Shown here: positions 12,801 through 20,700 of the stretch, one piece after another
Layout: each line of letters opens with the position of its first letter
Position numbering within the stretch: position 1 is the stretch's first letter
Assembly: GCA_964057225.1 (NCBI GenBank)
Contig: OZ059898.1
Coordinates: 13,826,001-13,890,000 of the forward strand
Reading direction: 5' to 3'
Source of the DNA: Auanema rhodensis
Lineage: Eukaryota; Animalia; Nematoda
DNA length: 64,000 nt
The notes under the pieces: generated by a model
What the model saw: only the letters and a program-made list of their open reading frames with translations
Database searches by the model: none
Told to the model about the DNA's origin: nothing
Translations under genes and position numbers: made by a program

Positions 12801-15792
12801 AAACCAAAGAACAAAGAATTCGTACTGCTTTGTCAGCACCACTTAAACACTTTTTTGAAAATATTAACGACATAGTTGATACCTGATCATGAAATTTTTA
12901 CATTCTACTACAAACTTAATGCCCTCCTTCATCTCAGCATTATCTCCGTGAATGACAGCCCTTAAAGCCAAAGGAATAGCCTCTTCAAGCTCCAGTTCGA
13001 CGAGAAGCTTTTCCTATAACTCTAATAATGAAAGGATATGCACTCCAATTTACCTTTAGCGCAGCAATATTTTGATTAATCTTTACAACTTTATTATGAT
13101 AGTCTTCATTTCTTTCTTCGTTTTCAAGAAGGATTGCGTTGTCTTGTTGTTGAGAGGTTACCACTAATCGAACGTAAGCTTCCTTTAACTCACGACATAA
13201 CCAAACGGCTGTTTCATCCACTTCAAATTCTCTTAAATAAATGCGTAACATATAACACTACTGTAGTCTTACTCTGGTATTTGCAGGGAAGATAATTTGC
13301 CAGTAATAATAAGCTGAATTAAAATTTTAGCTGATGCCGCAGGGTTAGTATTAATCTGCAGAAGAGCTGCGCAGTAAAGCCTTCAATACAACAATATGAA
13401 TATGAAAACAAAAGCGAACATACTGTGTCAAATCAACACCATCAGAGAGATCTTCGAAAGCACCCTCATCTTTATTTTTATGAGATTCGAGCCAAATCTT
13501 CAAATTACTTATTATCTCTTCCGACTTTTCTTCAAATCGTCGTTCAGCATTACCAACTTCAGCAAATTCTATACTTCGATTGCTTATCAAGGTAATTTTG
13601 AAGATAAAACAAACCTGGATTTTCTTTTCTTAATTCCTCTCGCTTTTTTAATAAGGCTACTAATTCTCGAATATGCACATCATAAGAAAACTATAAAACA
13701 GTAATTTTAAGAAAAAAAACTTAAGCTTCTCATTATACATCATGTCCGAATGGGTTATGAACAAGAAAAGCTGATAAGAAATGAACAGCAGCTTTTCGAA
13801 CATTGACTGATTTGTCGAGTAAACGTTTTCCTAAGATTAATATACTTTTTAATACAAATCAATATATATTCAAAACATACCTAATCGTTTTAAAATACAT
13901 TCTTTATATAAATCTAAAGGAATACAGTTTCTCTCAGCAATTTTTGAAAAAAGCTGAACTGACTTTTGCCTAACCATGGCATTCTGATCTATGAGATGGT
14001 TCTAAAGAAAAACAGTTATGTAATAAGAAATAAAAGCAATAATGTTTACTAGTAATTTCTCAAACATCCTTTCACGTGCTTTGGCCAACCTGCTATAATT
14101 CTGGCAATTTTCGTCTGATAGAGTACTACTGCTAATCATTTCAGCAAAAGCGGATAATGCAGCTGTTCGTAACTGATGAGGCTAGAAATATAAAAAATAT
14201 CACTATTAATCATGAAGTAACTTACATCTTTTTCTAGATAAGTTGCCAAGCTTGTTAAATGCTTGACCAAAACATTAGCTGCCTTCTCGGCAACTGCCTG
14301 TAAGAAAGATGAAACGGGTCGAATTTGCTGTACATTATCTTGATGTTCAAACTGAGCAACAACATTAAGCATATGCGAGATTAATACATCCATGTCATCT
14401 AAAATTTTGATTATACTTTCATATACAGAACCAATAAACTTACTATTTAGTGAAGCTCCAATTATAGGATCAATGAAAGGATATTGATGAGCATTGGCAG
14501 AATCTTTCAGGTACTCTAATTGACAACTTTTTTCTATTAATGCAGCAGCCATTCCTACAAGTAGGTAATTACAAAATGCATTATGAAACAAGTATACTGT
14601 GATAACAATCAGAACGTATACAAATAGCACGGCACAACTTGAATACATGAATTAGCCATGGCTTCGAGCTAACAAAAATGTTACTAGGATGTTCTAACAA
14701 CTTAAGAACAATATCAGTTAATACCCTAAAAATAGAATAAATCAAGTTTAAATCATTGCAATTAATTAACAAATAAGTTTGTAAACAAAGAATTTACCTC
14801 GTTAGAGATGGGTCGATTTTTCCGGTTCTCCACAAATAATGCAATGCACCTAATCTTTTTTTTCCTTCTCGGTCAAATACGGAAATATCTAGATAGTCTA
14901 TACAAGCGTCAATAACCTTTAAAATAATGAAGCAATTATTGACAAAAACACGAAGTATTACCTCGGGACGAAGCTTAACGTAACGTGTCATTTCAGCATC
15001 TAATTCGACACGAGCTCTACCTTTTTTAATTTGAGCTTTACTTCTACAATAAAACTTGAATATATAAAAAAACTGGTGTGATATGCCTTTTAATATATTC
15101 ATTTTCCAGAAGATGAATCAACCGACCAAATAAATAAATAATCATTAATACTCCATTCCTAACTTGGAGTACTTTATTTGAAGCCTGGGATTAGTAAAAT
15201 GTTCAGTGCACAGGGCAGAGTTGACTTACCTTTCTTTCTGAAGTACAATCAGATTCTAAGTAATTCTTTATGGCGTACACAACGCTAGGATATAACACTT
15301 TGTTACCTGAAAAAATAAAAGTTAATACGAGGTTTCAAAATGTTGCATAACATTGTAACAAATGCTGGAGAGCTGTTAATCGGATTTTCCAATTATCTTG
15401 AGAGTCGATATCAAATATAGAACAGCTCCGTGATAAAGAAAAAAAAGCTGGGAAATATTCTAAAAGTAATATCCATCGGTCGGTATCAACACTATCCGAA
15501 TATTTCGAGTTGAACTCTATAAACAAAATTGAGTAAAATTCGAGTAAGCGTTAAACCATTAAGTTGAACAGTGCAGACATCTTCTGGTAAAACGCTTTGA
15601 ACATAATAGGTTTCTGTATTTTCCATTAATAAATCATCATCTCGCTCAGGAATCTCGAAACTAAAGAAACGTGATTCAACTTCAAAGAGTTCATTAAACG
15701 TACACAAAATTGAAATCACCATTGTCAAAATTGTTTTCCTCTTCTTCATTGTCAGCTGGGTTATCTACGATGGTATCAACATCACTGCTCAT
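9811..15792 (-). CDS. dpy-28: Condensin I HEAT subunit CAP-D2 (Cnd1 domain)
   Basis: LDKSVNVRKAAVHFLSAFLVHNPFG, LRNNLMVAAGDLVFRSPNMVE, VRETAILVLSHITKNQMLKMRGSLADVA and YNMMPDFISRLS. The MxKxxG pattern is CAP-D2-like rather than CAP-D3-like. ATG 15792, stop 9811. Confidence 0.82.
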
Positions 15793-15898
15793 TCTTAACA
15801 TAATGAAACAAGTACAGTGTGGTTTCAAAACAAAAAAGGTGTATAATAGAAATGGAAATAACCAGCACAGTACAGAAAAACCCAGTATGGTATTCTAA

Positions 15899-17195
15899 TT
15901 ACTTTATTAAAAGAGAATCAACTTTAAAACGTGCAGTACCTAGAGACGATGTTAATCGTTTAATTTTTCCTGAAGCTTTATATGCTACAGGTAAAACAGG
16001 AGTATTATGAAATATTAAAAGTTCCTTAGCTGATCCTTCCTGTAATAAATATGATAAAAAGTAAAAAGATCGAAAAATCACCTGTATTAAAAGAATACCA
16101 CCAGCAAACATATGTTCTGGCGAAATAGCTGTTAAATCCTCTGACTCAAGAAAATTTCGTTTGAACCAGTCGTGAATTACTTCTACTGGTGTTTCATCTT
16201 CTGTTCTTCAAATGCCAAACTGATACACATAGAAAAATATAAATACCTTCTTAAAACAGCTTTAGTTAAGGATCTACTGAAATCAGAGCGAACTAACGCT
16301 TCACCACATCCACTCACAGACATTGAATATATACAATCGTTCACATTATCACACCAAACCGCGGAACCATATGTAGTTGAGTGCCCTAATCTCCCTAGAG
16401 TGACAAACAAAAATCAGATCGAATAGATAAGATTTACCAGGATGCTTCAAAAGAATACCTCCACTGGATGAGCAAGCATTTGCAACTCCATTCTAAAAAC
16501 TAAATATGATCGTATTGTTAAATTCTTGTATTGTACTTCGATAGAAACAGCACCAACAGTGTCAAGGCGTAAGTTAGATAAGGAGTTCGATAATTTTTGA
16601 GAAGATTCATTAAAATTAGTTAAAGCATGCGAACTAATTAACAATGATTCATCAATTAACGAAATACCTTAAAAGAAAGATACATAAATAAAAAAACTGA
16701 TAGTACCTGATTTTACCGCAAATTCTTCAGCACCATTGCCAACGAGTACCTGAGGCTTGACTAATCCCGGTACACCTTGATCTATAGCTAAAAGTTTGGA
16801 TACTTCTGAAGGGAAGCGTAAACGTGATACTGAGCCGACAGCTCCAAATCTATAAATACTAGAAGTGTACTGATGTTTTTAAAAACAAAATTCACTTCTT
16901 ACTGGTACTACTCATAAAACACGACTCACATTCTACCTTGCCAGCCCGTGTAAGGTTAGAACCCTTTCCACAATTAAAATATGGGTGAGCTTCCAAATTC
17001 TGAATAGACAAGTAAAAGATAAAAAATATTTATGCTACCATAACAGCTTCAACAACATCATTTCCTTCAATCTTCAAAGCATCAGCACACCATTGAGCAC
17101 AATTTTTTGGATTATTAAAACAAACACCTAAGAGAAACAATATAAATATATATGCATATTCACACCAATTTAGAACCTCCATGAAGTGCAATCAT
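15899..17195 (-). CDS. tasp-1: Taspase-1 / threonine aspartase (type 2 asparaginase, Ntn hydrolase)
   Basis: N-terminus MIALHGG; FNCGKGSNLTRAGKVECE; autocleavage site RLD|TVGAV; GRLGHSTTYGS; SVSGCGEALV. Confidence 0.85.
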
Positions 17196-17573
17196 TGTTT
17201 CTGAAGTTTTTTCTGCATAAATTCTTCAAAGACTATTGAACTGAAGCGATGTTTACAAACAATATCAGTGTTATGGAGAAGAACAGGTATGTCGTGCTTG
17301 AATTTCTTTAAAAAAAAAAACTATTAAAACACTGTTTGTTTATATTCGTACCTCAAAAATTTCTTTATCTGCTTCTCTGATGTCCAGTACCTCAACTGTA
17401 GCACGTGTGTTTTTCTTTTCAAAATAATTTGAAAGATGTTTTTTAAAATGTACGCATAAGGAGCAATCCGTACTTGTATACAATGTGAATTTGTTTATGG
17501 ATTCTTCGTAAAAAGAACTTGATTCAAATCTAGAAATCAAGAAAAGCTTCTGCAAACCACTTAGAAGCCTCAT
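17192..17573 (-). CDS. Glutaredoxin-like protein (DUF836 / C5orf63-YDR286C type), two exons
   Basis: FTLYTSTDCSLC (CxxC). An intron at ~17306-17351 joins to KFKHDIPVLLH...CKHRF, typical of this family. Mitochondrial-like N-terminus; stop TGA 17192-17194. Confidence 0.8.
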
Positions 17574-17754
17574 GTAAATATTAATAGTTTTTAAATTTGA
17601 AATGTTCTCAAAAAGTACCGCTCCAGGACCAATTTTGTAATATTTTCAAATTTATCCGTTAAATCGAAAATATGAGTTCTTTTTTGAATTTCGTATATAT
17701 TGTTTTGAATTCTTCGTATAATTATATTTAATTATTCAGTTTTTACTTATCCGA

Positions 17755-20700
17755 ATGAAGATGCCAGATACCGATAAACTTGATTTGAGTGATATTTCTG
17801 CTGAGACAAAAGAAATTGCTGAGAACGTCTGCAAAGCTATAATTGTATGTGTTTTTCCTTGCTTGTATTTGTATTGCTTGAATTTCAGCATGATGAGGAT
17901 TTGCCTTATGAAGAAGATATTTTAAAAAATCCTTGTTCCTTAAGAAGTTGGCAACGATATATCGATCATAAGAAAAAAACTAAATCTCATTGGAAGCAAA
18001 CCTGCCAGGTTTGTATTCATTTTGAACTATAACATTTAATAATTAGTGTTACTCTAGGTCTATGAACGTGCTCTTAAAGTATTCGAGCGTAGTTATAAGC
18101 TTTGGTATCAATACTTGAGATATCGTAGACGAATTATTAGTCATAAGTGCCCTACCGATGTTTCTTGGCAACATTTATGTGATGCTTACGAGCGTTGCTT
18201 AATTCATTTACATAAGGTTAATCCATTTTTGAAGGATAATTTTATTTTTTTCTATAGATGCCAAGAATATGGATGGACTATTGTGAAATCATGACAAAGC
18301 GTCGTATTATTACGGAAACTAGACGAGTTTTTGATCGTGCGCTAAGGTAAGGAACTAATGTTGATAATTTTTCATAGTCTATACAGAGCCTTGCCTGTTA
18401 CCCAACATATGAGAATTTGGCCTCTTTATATCGAATTTCTAACTAGTCATTCCATTCCTGAAACTACAATTCGTATTTACAGAAGGTTTGTACGCACTAA
18501 ATCGCACAAATAATGATTGATAACTTTAGATATCTAAAATTAAATCCCCGAGCTAGAGAGGAATATGTAACTTATTTAAAGTCAATTGATCAGCTTGACG
18601 AAGCAGCCAAACAACTAGCTATATTAGTTAATGAAGATAAGCCTATTAGTGAGCAAGGAAAGACTGCTCATCAGGTATATAATTAAAAAAAAAACAAAAA
18701 AAAACTTTCGTTTTATAGCTTTGGTCAGAACTGTGCGAACTTATTTCAAAAAATCCTACCAAGGTTCATTCTCTTCAAGTTGATGCTATTATGCGTCAAG
18801 GAATCAGTAAATACTCTGACCAGGTCAGTTACATTATAATATGTTTCCTGTTTTCACGTTTTTGAATTTCAATTTAATGTGAAACAAGCGTCTCTTCATT
18901 GTAATTTTAACACCTGTTCGCTTCGGTTGTGCTAATATGAGTATTATATATTTAAAATAAAATTTATTTTCTAGGTAGGAGTTCTATGGTGTTCATTAGC
19001 TGAATACTATATTAGAGGTGGACAATTCGAAAAGGTAGTTCACTGGTTTAATCATCGATGTTTCAATATTATATTCAGGCTCGTGATGTTTACGAAGAAG
19101 CTATGGCTACAGTTAAGACTGTTCGTGATTTTACTCAAATTTTTGATGCCTATGCTAAATTTGAAGAAAGAGAAACAGCTGCGAGGTATTTCGAATTTTT
19201 TTACAGAATTTTGTACTTCCTTATTAGAATGGACGATGTTGAAGAAGGAGACGATGAAGCTGAGCTTGAATTGGAATGGATGTTTGCCAGGTATGTTGTT
19301 TTTTTAGTATATAAATGTAATTTTGAAAATTAGATTTGAACATTTAATGGGGAGACGTCAGTTACTACTTAATAGTGTGCTATTACGACAAAATCCTCAT
19401 AACTGTCACGAATGGCTGAATAGAGTTAAGCTTTATGAAGGACATCCAGAAAAAGTAATATAAATTTACTTATGCTAAAGCATACTTTACTGTTTTCTTT
19501 CAGCAAATAGATACTTTCCTGGAATCCGTTAAGACGATTAATCCTAAGCTTCAAGTTGGTAAACTTAACCTTGTCTGGATTGAGTTTGCTAAATTTTATG
19601 AACAAGGTGGACAGCTGGACGATGTAATTTGTATATTCTAATATTTACCTCATATCTGTTACTGTTAGGCTCGTAGCATCTTCGAAAAAGCTCTACAAAC
19701 TCCCTTCCTCAAAGTTGATGAGTTAGCCATCGTATGGACAGAGTATGCAGAATTAGAGCTTCGTAACAAGTAAAAAATATTTTAAATACTGTTGTATATT
19801 ATTTTTTCAAGACATGCTGATAAGGCTATATTGATTATGAAGAGAGCTTGTGCTGCACCCCCTCGTCGTGCTAACTACTTTGATGAATCTGAAACTGTTC
19901 AAAACCGGGTTTACAAAAGTTTACGAGTTTGGTCAATGTATGCAGATTTGGAAGAAAGTTTTGGAACGGCATGTTGATGGGTTGTTTTCATTTATTAAAC
20001 GTGTGTTGTTCAGGTGGACGGGACCAAAGCTGTTTACGAAAGAATTATTGATCTTCGAATTGCTACTCCGCAAATTATTATTAACTATGCTATGTTCCTT
20101 GAAGAACATGAATACTTCGAACATGCTTTCAAGGTTAGATTCAAACTGTCTTATATCTCATATCATTCTCGATATATTATAGGCATATGAACGTGGTATT
20201 GCATTATTCAAATGGCCTAATGTTTATGATATTTGGAATTTATACTTAATCAAGTTCATTAAGCGCTATGTAAGAATACAGATGACTATCATTTTGTTTC
20301 TATTTTTTTTCAGGATGGAAAGAAGTTAGAGCGTGCTCGGGATCTTTTTGAACAATGTTTGGAGTCTTGTCCTGCAAAATTCGCCAAAAGTATTTTTTGT
20401 TGTTGAAATAATTGATCAAAACTTAATTTTAAAGATATATTCTTATTGTATGCCAAGTTAGAGGAGAAACACGGATTATCTCGACATGCCATGTCTATAT
20501 ATAATAGAGCTACTAATGCAGTTGAAAAGGAAGAAATGTATGGCATGTTCAATATTTACATCAAAAAGGCGGCAGAAATGTATGGACTACCTCATACTAG
20601 ACCCATTTACGAACATGCTATTAGCATGCTACCTGAAAGTAGATCTCGGTATGATTGTTTGGAAAATTTTCTTTGATTTCTGAGTCGTTTTAGTGATATG

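What the first reader, a model, noticed from the sequence alone, without database searches (positions are those of the whole stretch)
17185..17215. Prokaryote-style ATGA stop-start overlap between the glutaredoxin-like gene and taspase-1
Seen (minus strand): ...AAA CTT CAG AAA CAA TGA ends the DUF836 ORF, and the same ATGA (17195-17192) starts ATG ATT GCA CTT CAT GGA G (MIALHGG), the conserved asparaginase/taspase N-terminus. The nearest acceptor (acttcag) lies inside the upstream coding exon, 5 nt before the ATG, and there is no room for a 3' UTR. Inference: three mechanisms are possible. (1) Mutually exclusive processing, where trans-splicing inside the upstream CDS destroys that mRNA (an extreme SL1-type operon). 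(2) A bicistronic mRNA with termination-reinitiation. (3) A -1 frameshift giving a fusion protein.
Basis: partly seen in the sequence, partly recalled or inferred. Interest (0 to 1): 0.8.

Follow-up and report, generated by a model that had tools for sequence, protein, structure and literature searches.

The report
Two-protein worm mRNA with overlapping stop-start
In this roundworm a small glutaredoxin-like protein and the protease taspase are carried on one mature spliced mRNA, with the first gene's stop codon overlapping the second's start (ATGA); this layout is kept across distant roundworms and gives a testable case of one animal mRNA making two proteins.

Summary
On the minus strand the two-exon DUF836/glutaredoxin-like ORF ends at TGA 17194-17192. 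That TGA sits inside an ATGA whose ATG (17195-17193) opens a 9-exon, 317-codon taspase ORF.

Spliced RNA contigs from four runs of one study cross the ATGA. They have all 11 introns removed and no base differences. The same assemblies break at the normal ~92-nt operon spacer after taspase. So the dicistronic RNA is mature, and an assembly indel or fusion ORF is ruled out.

The pairing is old:
- ATGA overlap in two other transcriptomes, one clade V-like and one clade IV-like.
- TAATGA in Auanema melissensis and GTGA in Diploscapter pachys.
- Spacers of 12 and 26 nt in Plectus-like contigs, and ~136 nt in one metagenome contig.
- No DUF836 next to taspase in Ancylostoma, Trichinella or Trichuris.

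How taspase is translated is not settled. I favour translation from the dicistronic mRNA, by leaky scanning and/or restart at the overlap. A frameshift fusion is rejected.

Unchecked notes of this scan report other dicistronic pairs elsewhere in this genome.

The parts
17606..17608 (-). 5' end of the longest RNA contig (17608), two bases upstream of a tttttgag|AAC acceptor-like site. Possible SL1 trans-splice site of the dicistronic mRNA.
   Evidence: X2 record 6 starts at 17608. Sequence read. The SL link is inferred; no loose SL letters were seen here.
17352..17573 (-). DUF836/glutaredoxin-like exon 1. ATG at 17573 with weak context (T at -3); 74 codons; CSLC (CxxC) motif.
   Evidence: Pfam Glrx-like, E = 3.9e-4; joint 17305/17352.
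17306..17351 (-). DUF836 intron, 46 nt, GT..AG.
   Evidence: joint seen in all four runs..
17177..17305 (-). Shared exon. It holds the last 37 DUF836 codons plus TGA (17305-17192) and the first 19 nt of the taspase ORF (17195-17177).
   Evidence: piece 17175-17305 is continuous in the contigs, with 0 other letters and 0 gaps..
17192..17195 (-). ATGA stop-start overlap: taspase ATG 17195-17193 and DUF836 TGA 17194-17192.
15899..17195 (-). Taspase (threonine aspartase 1-like) coding region. Nine exons: 17195-17177, 17127-17039, 16999-16896, 16849-16707, 16667-16537, 16492-16438, 16394-16247, 16205-16082, 16039-15899. 954 nt in all; LDTVGAV nucleophile site; TAA stop at 15901-15899.
   Evidence: (Asparaginase_2, E = 1e-5 for one exon)..
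15903..15908 (-). AATAAA poly(A) signal overlapping the last taspase codons. RNA contigs end 8-14 nt further on, at 15889-15895.
15797..15888 (-). About 92-nt stretch covered by no RNA contig in X2-X4. This is a classical operon spacer between taspase and the next gene, a Cnd1-type condensin subunit (ATG 15792, preceded by ttaag|A).
   Evidence: depth fractions of bins 15743-15869 and 15870-15996.. Cnd1 identity from the A. melissensis model.

Best explanation
Shown: DUF836 and taspase are transcribed and spliced into one mature, polyadenylated dicistronic mRNA. It starts near 17606 and ends near 15889. It is the only visible mRNA for DUF836, which has no 3' UTR or poly(A) signal of its own. 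This gene pair is an old feature of chromadorean nematodes.

Inferred: DUF836 is translated from the 5'-proximal AUG. Taspase is translated from the same mRNA by ribosomes that reach the AUGA. These are either 40S subunits that skipped the weak DUF836 AUG and the two weak internal AUGs (leaky scanning), or ribosomes that terminate at the overlapping UGA and restart on the spot. The two routes may combine. The last upstream AUG (17218) opens only 8 codons and ends on the same UGA, which is the ideal geometry for short-ORF reinitiation.
For: RNA:
- One spliced contig per run covers both ORFs (X2 1331 nt, X3 1295 nt, X4 1289 nt, X1 867 nt).
- It has 0 mismatches or indels across 17175-17305.
- The same assemblies leave the ~92-nt taspase-Cnd1 spacer uncovered, so ordinary operon junctions are resolved in them.

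Other species, both ORFs on one transcript contig:
- L003, ATGA.
- L007, ATGA.
- L005, Plectus-like, 26-nt spacer.

Genomes and metagenome contigs:
- A. melissensis, AAA TAA TGA.
- D. pachys, GCG TGA with GTG at the start position and an ATG 6 codons upstream.
- L008, 12-nt spacer.
- L012, ~136-nt ATG-free spacer.

Signals in the window:
- The DUF836 AUG has T at -3.
- The internal AUGs have C and T at -3.
- The taspase AUG has A at -3, and a purine sits there in all 8 sequences.

ATG density is 0.9 per 100 nt in the DUF836 ORF against 2.2 in the taspase ORF of the window, with a similar trend in relatives. The internal AUG at 17457 opens a 4-codon ORF and the one at 17218 an 8-codon ORF ending on the ATGA (read). 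RNA around the junction is not more structured than shuffles. The proposed internal acceptor is poor.
Against: - No ribosome or protein data exist, and the raw reads of the runs were not available (contigs only). A minor SL-spliced taspase mRNA would therefore be invisible.
- Reinitiation after a 111-codon ORF normally needs a special element, and the viral TURBS motif UGGGA is absent.
- Leaky scanning does not fit the Plectus-like mRNA. There the first AUG is strong and three of the four internal AUGs have a purine at -3.
- The spacer is not constrained in every lineage (12, 26 and ~136 nt), so strict stop-start coupling is not universal.
- Nematodes have a ready alternative in SL trans-splicing.
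- The contig evidence in the window comes from a single study.
Confidence: 0.5

Rival explanations
1. Alternative processing of one precursor. The unprocessed dicistronic RNA serves only as the DUF836 mRNA. A share of precursors is SL trans-spliced at an AG inside the last DUF836 codons (17201, or the stronger site at 17224), giving a monocistronic taspase mRNA and destroying the DUF836 message. This would be an extreme zero-spacer operon.
For: The organism trans-splices SL1: the loose letters CAAGTTTG join to ttcAG at 17738-17739 of the SYF1 gene. An AG lies 1-14 nt before the taspase ATG in all eight sequences. ctttgaag|AA, 28 nt upstream, scores 8.1 on the local acceptor PWM, within the range of real acceptors. 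In Ancylostoma, where taspase stands alone, strong acceptor-like ttaacag/tatag sequences directly precede the ATG. Tip clipping during contig assembly would hide a short SL branch.
Against: No loose SL end or contig break appears at 17195-17225 in four runs. Relatives lack a pyrimidine-rich acceptor near the ATG (tatcggaag in L002, cctcgag in L001). Dicistronic contigs are the assembled form in four independent transcriptomes, whereas a true operon junction in the same window is resolved. Splicing at 17224 would leave an upstream AUG in the leader.
Confidence: 0.35
2. A programmed -1 ribosomal frameshift, stop-codon readthrough or alternative splicing makes a DUF836-taspase fusion protein.
For: Taspase lies in the -1 frame of DUF836 in the window, L002, L003, L007, L001 and L005. 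That frame is open for 11 codons before the ATG, and G AAA AAA C lies within it. A D. pachys gene model (PAV57207.1) is annotated as a fusion.
Against: The frame relation is 0, with two intervening stops, in L008 and +1 in L012. There is no conserved slippery heptamer. There is no stable downstream structure: z-scores run from -0.7 to +1.9. No alternative joint appears in the RNA. No AG within the open 33 nt would keep the frame from the phase-0 donor. The D. pachys fusion model skips the conserved DIPVL motif by reading exon 2 in the wrong frame, which is an annotation artefact. A. melissensis has TAA and then TGA in frame.
Confidence: 0.03
3. An internal promoter within the DUF836 gene gives an independent, unspliced-leader taspase mRNA. 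The dicistronic RNA would then be translated only for DUF836.
For: Hybrid operons with internal promoters are known in C. elegans (my own knowledge). The contigs cannot exclude a nested transcript.
Against: Only a 46-nt intron and coding exons are available as promoter space. The taspase ATG has no leader outside the DUF836 CDS. No contig start was seen there.
Confidence: 0.05

Closest known systems
C. elegans / C. briggsae SL1-type operons (Williams et al. 1999, as described in PMC9258526)
   Same: Two same-strand nematode genes with no intercistronic spacer, co-transcribed.
   Different: In SL1-type operons the upstream gene has its own complete 3' UTR and poly(A) site directly beside the SL1 acceptor, and the two mRNAs are separate. 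Here the upstream ORF ends inside the downstream start codon, no upstream poly(A) signal exists, and the mature RNA carries both ORFs.
Termination-reinitiation at overlapping stop-start codons: influenza B M1/BM2 UAAUG (PMC3035654), murine norovirus VP2 (PMC2793014), review PMC10275272; chloroplast atpB-atpE AUGA (PMC3241655)
   Same: AUGA/UAAUG geometry. A long upstream ORF ends on the start of the next, on one mRNA.
   Different: The viral cases need a TURBS element (UGGGA motif) upstream, and none is present here. This is a cellular nuclear gene pair of an animal, and dependence on termination is untested. Some lineages have spacers of 12 to ~136 nt.
Leaky-scanning bicistronic loci of green algae (PMC7896298, PMC11892635) and directly translated Drosophila dicistronic mRNAs such as stoned and Adh-Adhr (PMC2776167)
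   Same: A conserved mature dicistronic nuclear mRNA. The first AUG is weak, the second strong, and ORF1 is poor in AUGs.
   Different: ORF1 here is 111 codons and keeps two internal AUGs. The organism has SL trans-splicing, which normally resolves polycistrons. The Plectus-like version has a strong first AUG.
Other dicistronic pairs noted by this scan in the same genome (unchecked AI notes; for example LYRM4-MAT1, TMEM242-PIG-L, COX14-SMIM4, a Gly-rich ORF with ATGA overlap)
   Same: A small upstream protein gene is joined within a few bases to a larger gene on one spliced RNA. The layout is kept among nematodes.
   Different: The genes differ. I did not test those claims, so they are leads and not support.

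Membership tests
Taspase / threonine aspartase 1 (Pfam Asparaginase_2, Ntn hydrolase) | Asparaginase_2 domain | tested here: met
   The exon at 16895-17011 hits PF01112 with E = 1e-5 (25.3 bits; the cut-off of 27 is for a whole protein). All nine exons align collinearly to P0002 and to the A. melissensis protein.
Taspase / threonine aspartase 1 (Pfam Asparaginase_2, Ntn hydrolase) | Autoprocessing site with nucleophile Thr (LD|TVGAV) and SSGG / GRxG motifs | tested here: met
   The exon translations give ..NLRLDTVGAVSIE..CSSSGGILLKHP and RLGHSTTYGSAVW.
Taspase / threonine aspartase 1 (Pfam Asparaginase_2, Ntn hydrolase) | Closer to taspase than to isoaspartyl peptidase / L-asparaginase / glycosylasparaginase | tested here: met
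Tested by proxy. The nearest complete relative, P0002, matches human Threonine aspartase 1 (2a8i) at E = 4.5e-34, against 3e-13 or worse for the others. Nematode relatives are named Threonine aspartase 1.
DUF836 / glutaredoxin-like (PF05768) | Glrx-like domain with a CxxC motif, about 100-aa protein | tested here: met
   Exon 1 alone scores E = 3.9e-4 and 21.1 bits against a cut-off of 26. CSLC is present. Both exons align to the Plectus-like P0026, which carries PF05768.
SL1-type operon | Upstream gene has its own AAUAAA and poly(A) site directly next to the downstream trans-splice site | tested here: not met
   No AATAAA lies before 17195. RNA contigs run on from DUF836 to the taspase poly(A) site.
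SL1-type operon | Downstream gene receives SL1 at the junction | not testable with these tools
   Only Logan contigs were available, and no SL loose end was listed at 17195-17225. Absence from contigs is not evidence of absence.
TURBS-dependent termination-reinitiation | Stop and start overlap or lie within a few nt of each other | tested here: met
   ATGA in the window, L003 and L007; TAATG in L002.
TURBS-dependent termination-reinitiation | UGGGA motif 1 within about 40-90 nt upstream | tested here: not met
   No TGGGA occurs in the 80-120 nt upstream in any of seven sequences.
Leaky-scanning dicistronic mRNA | Weak ORF1 start, AUG-poor ORF1, strong ORF2 start | tested here: inconclusive
   Window: T at -3 for ORF1, two internal AUGs (C and T at -3), A at -3 for ORF2, and ATG density 0.9 against 2.2 per 100 nt. 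The Plectus-like L005 has a strong first AUG and four internal AUGs.
-1 programmed ribosomal frameshift fusion | Conserved frame relation, slippery heptamer and downstream structure | tested here: not met
   The frames are -1, 0 and +1 among lineages. Folding z-scores are not negative.

The most novel reading that the evidence does not exclude
Chromadorean nematodes keep a class of mature dicistronic mRNAs that escape SL trans-splicing. On these, the second protein is made by prokaryote-like translational coupling: restart at an AUGA/UAAUG overlap after a full-length 100-codon ORF, without any viral-type TURBS element. DUF836-taspase would be a member conserved from Plectida to Rhabditida.
Probability: 0.25. 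Interest if true: 0.8.

Novelty: new variant of a known kind. Interest (0 to 1): 0.6.

Why it matters
Nematodes are the textbook case of animals that cut polycistronic RNA into single-gene mRNAs by trans-splicing. Here a gene pair stays on one mature mRNA, with the stop of one ORF inside the start of the next. It has been kept since before the split of Plectida and Rhabditida.

This gives a natural, genetically tractable test of how an animal ribosome reaches a second ORF after a 111-codon first ORF: by leaky scanning, by coupled restart, or through hidden trans-splicing.

There is also a practical consequence for annotation. The small DUF836 gene is missing from the A. melissensis models. It is mis-fused to taspase in D. 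pachys, and taspase is mis-fused to condensin in A. melissensis. I found no paper linking DUF836 and taspase.

Tried and rejected
- Word-index protein search with DUF836 exon 1 found nothing. The gene is mostly unannotated in nematodes.
- Assembly indel or true fusion ORF: rejected. RNA contigs match the genome exactly across the junction.
- Alternative-splice fusion: rejected. No such joint exists, and no frame-keeping AG lies within the open 33 nt.
- Frameshift or readthrough: rejected.
- TURBS motif: absent.
- Stable RNA structure at the junction: absent.
- No DUF836 was found within 3-5 kb upstream of taspase in A. caninum, Trichinella or Trichuris.
- Literature searches for a DUF836/taspase dicistron or for unresolved nematode dicistronic mRNAs returned nothing specific.
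- Left out under the operators' rule: the joined (spliced) DUF836 and taspase proteins of the window were not sent to any search, fold or structure tool, and exons were searched by reference only. One local script concatenated the two exon DNAs, solely to shuffle base composition for an ATG count.

Full report
**Observation.** On the minus strand the sequence reads ...AAA CTT CAG AAA CAA TGA TTG CAC..., with A-T-G-A at 17195-17192.
- The upstream ORF starts at ATG 17573 and runs to GAG 17352.
- It is interrupted by a 46-nt GT..AG intron (17351-17306).
- It resumes at 17305 and ends at TGA 17194-17192, giving 74 + 37 codons.
- Exon 1 hits Pfam Glrx-like/DUF836 (E = 3.9e-4) and carries a CSLC motif.
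- The ATG at 17195 opens MIALHG-G.

In the taspase frame a TGA at 17228 closes the frame 11 codons upstream, and there is no earlier ATG.

**RNA evidence.** Laid on 14600-18400, they give 12 joints on the minus strand, all GT..AG in gene orientation. No base differences or indels were listed.

One contig per run covers both ORFs:

| Run | Contig length (nt) | Span |
|---|---|---|
| X2 | 1331 | 17608 to 15889 |
| X3 | 1295 | 17578 to 15895 |
| X4 | 1289 | 17599 to 15922 |
| X1 | 867 | from 17557 |

The piece 17175-17305 is a single exon that contains the ATGA. With these introns the taspase ORF is intact: nine exons and 954 nt, ending at TAA 15901-15899. An AATAAA at 15908-15903 precedes the contig ends at 15889-15895.

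The same assemblies contain an internal control. The next gene downstream is a Cnd1-type condensin subunit and sits on a different contig. From the bin depths, about 15797-15888 is covered by no contig in X2-X4. An ordinary ~92-nt operon spacer is therefore resolved in these data, while the DUF836-taspase junction is not.

The divergent SYF1/XAB2 gene carries the loose letters CAAGTTTG in front of 17738. This is the 3' end of nematode SL1, so the organism is an SL1-trans-splicing nematode. No loose SL end was listed near 17195-17225. Contigs drop rare variants, however, so this is not proof of absence.

**Identity of the genes.** A full HMMER scan with the 48-aa exon at 16249-16392 gave 19 hits.
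- The nematode proteins among them start with MIAVHGG.
- They come from Ancylostoma, Angiostrongylus, Diploscapter, Panagrellus and Meloidogyne.
- The nearest complete relative, P0002, matches human Threonine aspartase 1 at E = 4.5e-34. Isoaspartyl peptidases and asparaginases score 3e-13 or worse.
- The window's exons encode the LDTVGAV nucleophile site.
- Both window genes align exon by exon to relatives.

**Conservation.**

| Locus | Source | Type | Junction |
|---|---|---|---|
| window | this genome | genome + RNA contigs | ATGA overlap |
| L002 | Auanema melissensis | genome | ..CGA AAA TAA TGA TAG..: TAATG, i.e. the last sense codon turned to TAA in front of the retained ATGA |
| L001 | Diploscapter pachys | genome | ..CGG GCG TGA..: GTG in place of the ATG, in-frame ATG six codons upstream, about 22-nt overlap |
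| L003 | SRR14039636 | transcript contig | ..ELQKKK* with gaaATGAtc, then MIAVHGG |
| L007 | SRR1175676 | transcript contig | ..IQREQQ* with caATGAta, then MISLHAGAG |
| L005 | SRR13325286 | transcript contig | complete 106-aa Glrx-like ORF, TAA, 26-nt spacer, taspase |
| L008 | JGI contig | contig | 12-nt spacer; the two ORFs are in the same frame with a further stop between them |
| L012 | JGI contig | intronless contig | ~136-nt ATG-free, repeat-like spacer; frame +1 |

- A. melissensis shows the same synteny as the window: SYF1 divergent, then unannotated DUF836, then taspase, then Cnd1.
- The annotated D. pachys protein PAV57207.1 joins DUF836 exon 1 to taspase by reading exon 2 in the wrong frame.
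- The L005 taspase is 74% identical to that of Plectus sambesii.
- No DUF836 lies within 3-5 kb upstream of taspase in Ancylostoma caninum, Trichinella or Trichuris.
- A taspase tree places L003 with Auanema (85/83). It places L007 as sister to Panagrellus + Meloidogyne (94/93) and L005 with Plectus (100/100). The window protein was left out of this tree.

The pairing on one RNA therefore predates the split of Plectida and Rhabditida. The ATGA overlap is shared by clade IV-like and clade V lineages.

**Mechanism tests.**
- *Fusion by frameshift or readthrough.* This is rejected. The frame relation is -1, 0 or +1 in different lineages. A. melissensis has two stops in a row. No conserved slippery site exists. 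The junction RNA is no more stable than shuffles, with z = +0.96, -0.73, -0.04, -0.20, +1.64 and +1.89.
- *Viral-type reinitiation.* The UGGGA motif is absent from all seven upstream regions.
- *Internal trans-splicing.* I built a position weight matrix from the 15 RNA-supported acceptors in this stretch. On it, acttcag|AA scores -1.4 and ranks 45th of 65 exonic AGs. The verified SL1 site of SYF1 scores 2.5, and ctttgaag|AA, 28 nt before the ATG, scores 8.1. The matrix is small, so this only shows that the named acceptor is not special.
- *Leaky scanning.* The DUF836 AUG has T at -3 in the window, A. melissensis and D. pachys. In the window the two internal AUGs have C and T at -3, and they open ORFs of 4 and 8 codons; the second of these ends on the same TGA. 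The taspase AUG has A at -3, and a purine sits there in all eight sequences. ATG density is 0.9 per 100 nt in the DUF836 ORF against 2.2 in taspase.
- *Limit of leaky scanning.* The Plectus-like mRNA has a strong first AUG and four internal AUGs. Leaky scanning therefore cannot be the general answer.

**Conclusion.**
- Shown: a mature, conserved dicistronic mRNA with a genuine stop-start overlap.
- Inferred: DUF836 is expressed from this mRNA, since it has no 3' end of its own.
- Unresolved: how taspase is translated. I put about 0.5 on translation from the dicistronic mRNA (leaky scanning and/or restart at the overlap). I put 0.35 on a minor SL-trans-spliced monocistronic taspase mRNA, and the rest on an internal promoter or a fusion protein.

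**Comparison with known systems.**
- It resembles C. elegans SL1-type operons in having no spacer (PMC9258526), but it fails their defining feature of an upstream poly(A) site beside the acceptor.
- It has the geometry of influenza B and norovirus termination-reinitiation and of chloroplast atpB-atpE (PMC3035654, PMC2793014, PMC3241655), but lacks their upstream element.
- It shares the weak-then-strong start pattern of green-algal bicistronic loci (PMC11892635).
- Searches found no paper on a DUF836-taspase dicistron.
- Unchecked notes of this scan list other dicistronic pairs in the same genome. They shaped my attention to start-codon contexts but are not evidence.

**Limits.**
- The window RNA evidence is from contigs of one study.
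- The organisms behind L003, L007, L008 and L012 are known only by tree placement or similarity.
- L008 and L012 may be DNA rather than RNA.

Noticed in passing
window 17738-17757 (+): The SYF1/XAB2 splicing-factor gene (ATG 17755, divergent from DUF836) has a contig with the loose letters CAAGTTTG joined at ttcAG 17738-17739. These letters are the 3' end of canonical nematode SL1, which gives direct evidence of SL1 trans-splicing in this organism.
   Followed up: partly
window 15790-15900 (-): Taspase and the downstream Cnd1-type condensin gene are separated by about 92 nt that no RNA contig covers. The condensin contig ends at about 15796, next to ttaag|A ATG. This looks like a classical operon junction with a 1-nt leader, so the locus would be a three-gene operon whose first two genes stay on one mRNA.
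   Followed up: partly
L002:3618-4001 and L002:4001-11327 (Auanema melissensis, GCA_943334845.2): Annotation errors. The DUF836 gene is not annotated at all, and taspase is merged with the Cnd1 condensin gene into one 1669-aa protein (P0001).
   Followed up: yes
L001:4001-7377 (Diploscapter pachys PAV57207.1): The annotated 426-aa protein joins DUF836 exon 1 to taspase through a wrong-frame reading of DUF836 exon 2. At the conserved start position D. pachys has GTG rather than ATG, so its taspase start is either the ATG six codons upstream or a non-AUG codon.
   Followed up: partly
L012:133-268: The ~136-nt spacer between DUF836 and taspase in this metagenome contig is purine-rich and looks like degenerate short tandem repeats (GGAACTGGAGTAA-like units). 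It contains no ATG.
   Followed up: no
L009, L010: The taspase genes of Trichinella and Trichuris are intronless (one ORF of 1062 and 1047 nt), in contrast to the nine exons here.
   Followed up: no
HMMER and word-search hit lists: No Caenorhabditis protein appeared among the taspase hits, although the sister-group Diploscapter did. Caenorhabditis may lack taspase, or its copy may be too diverged to be found with these queries.
   Followed up: no
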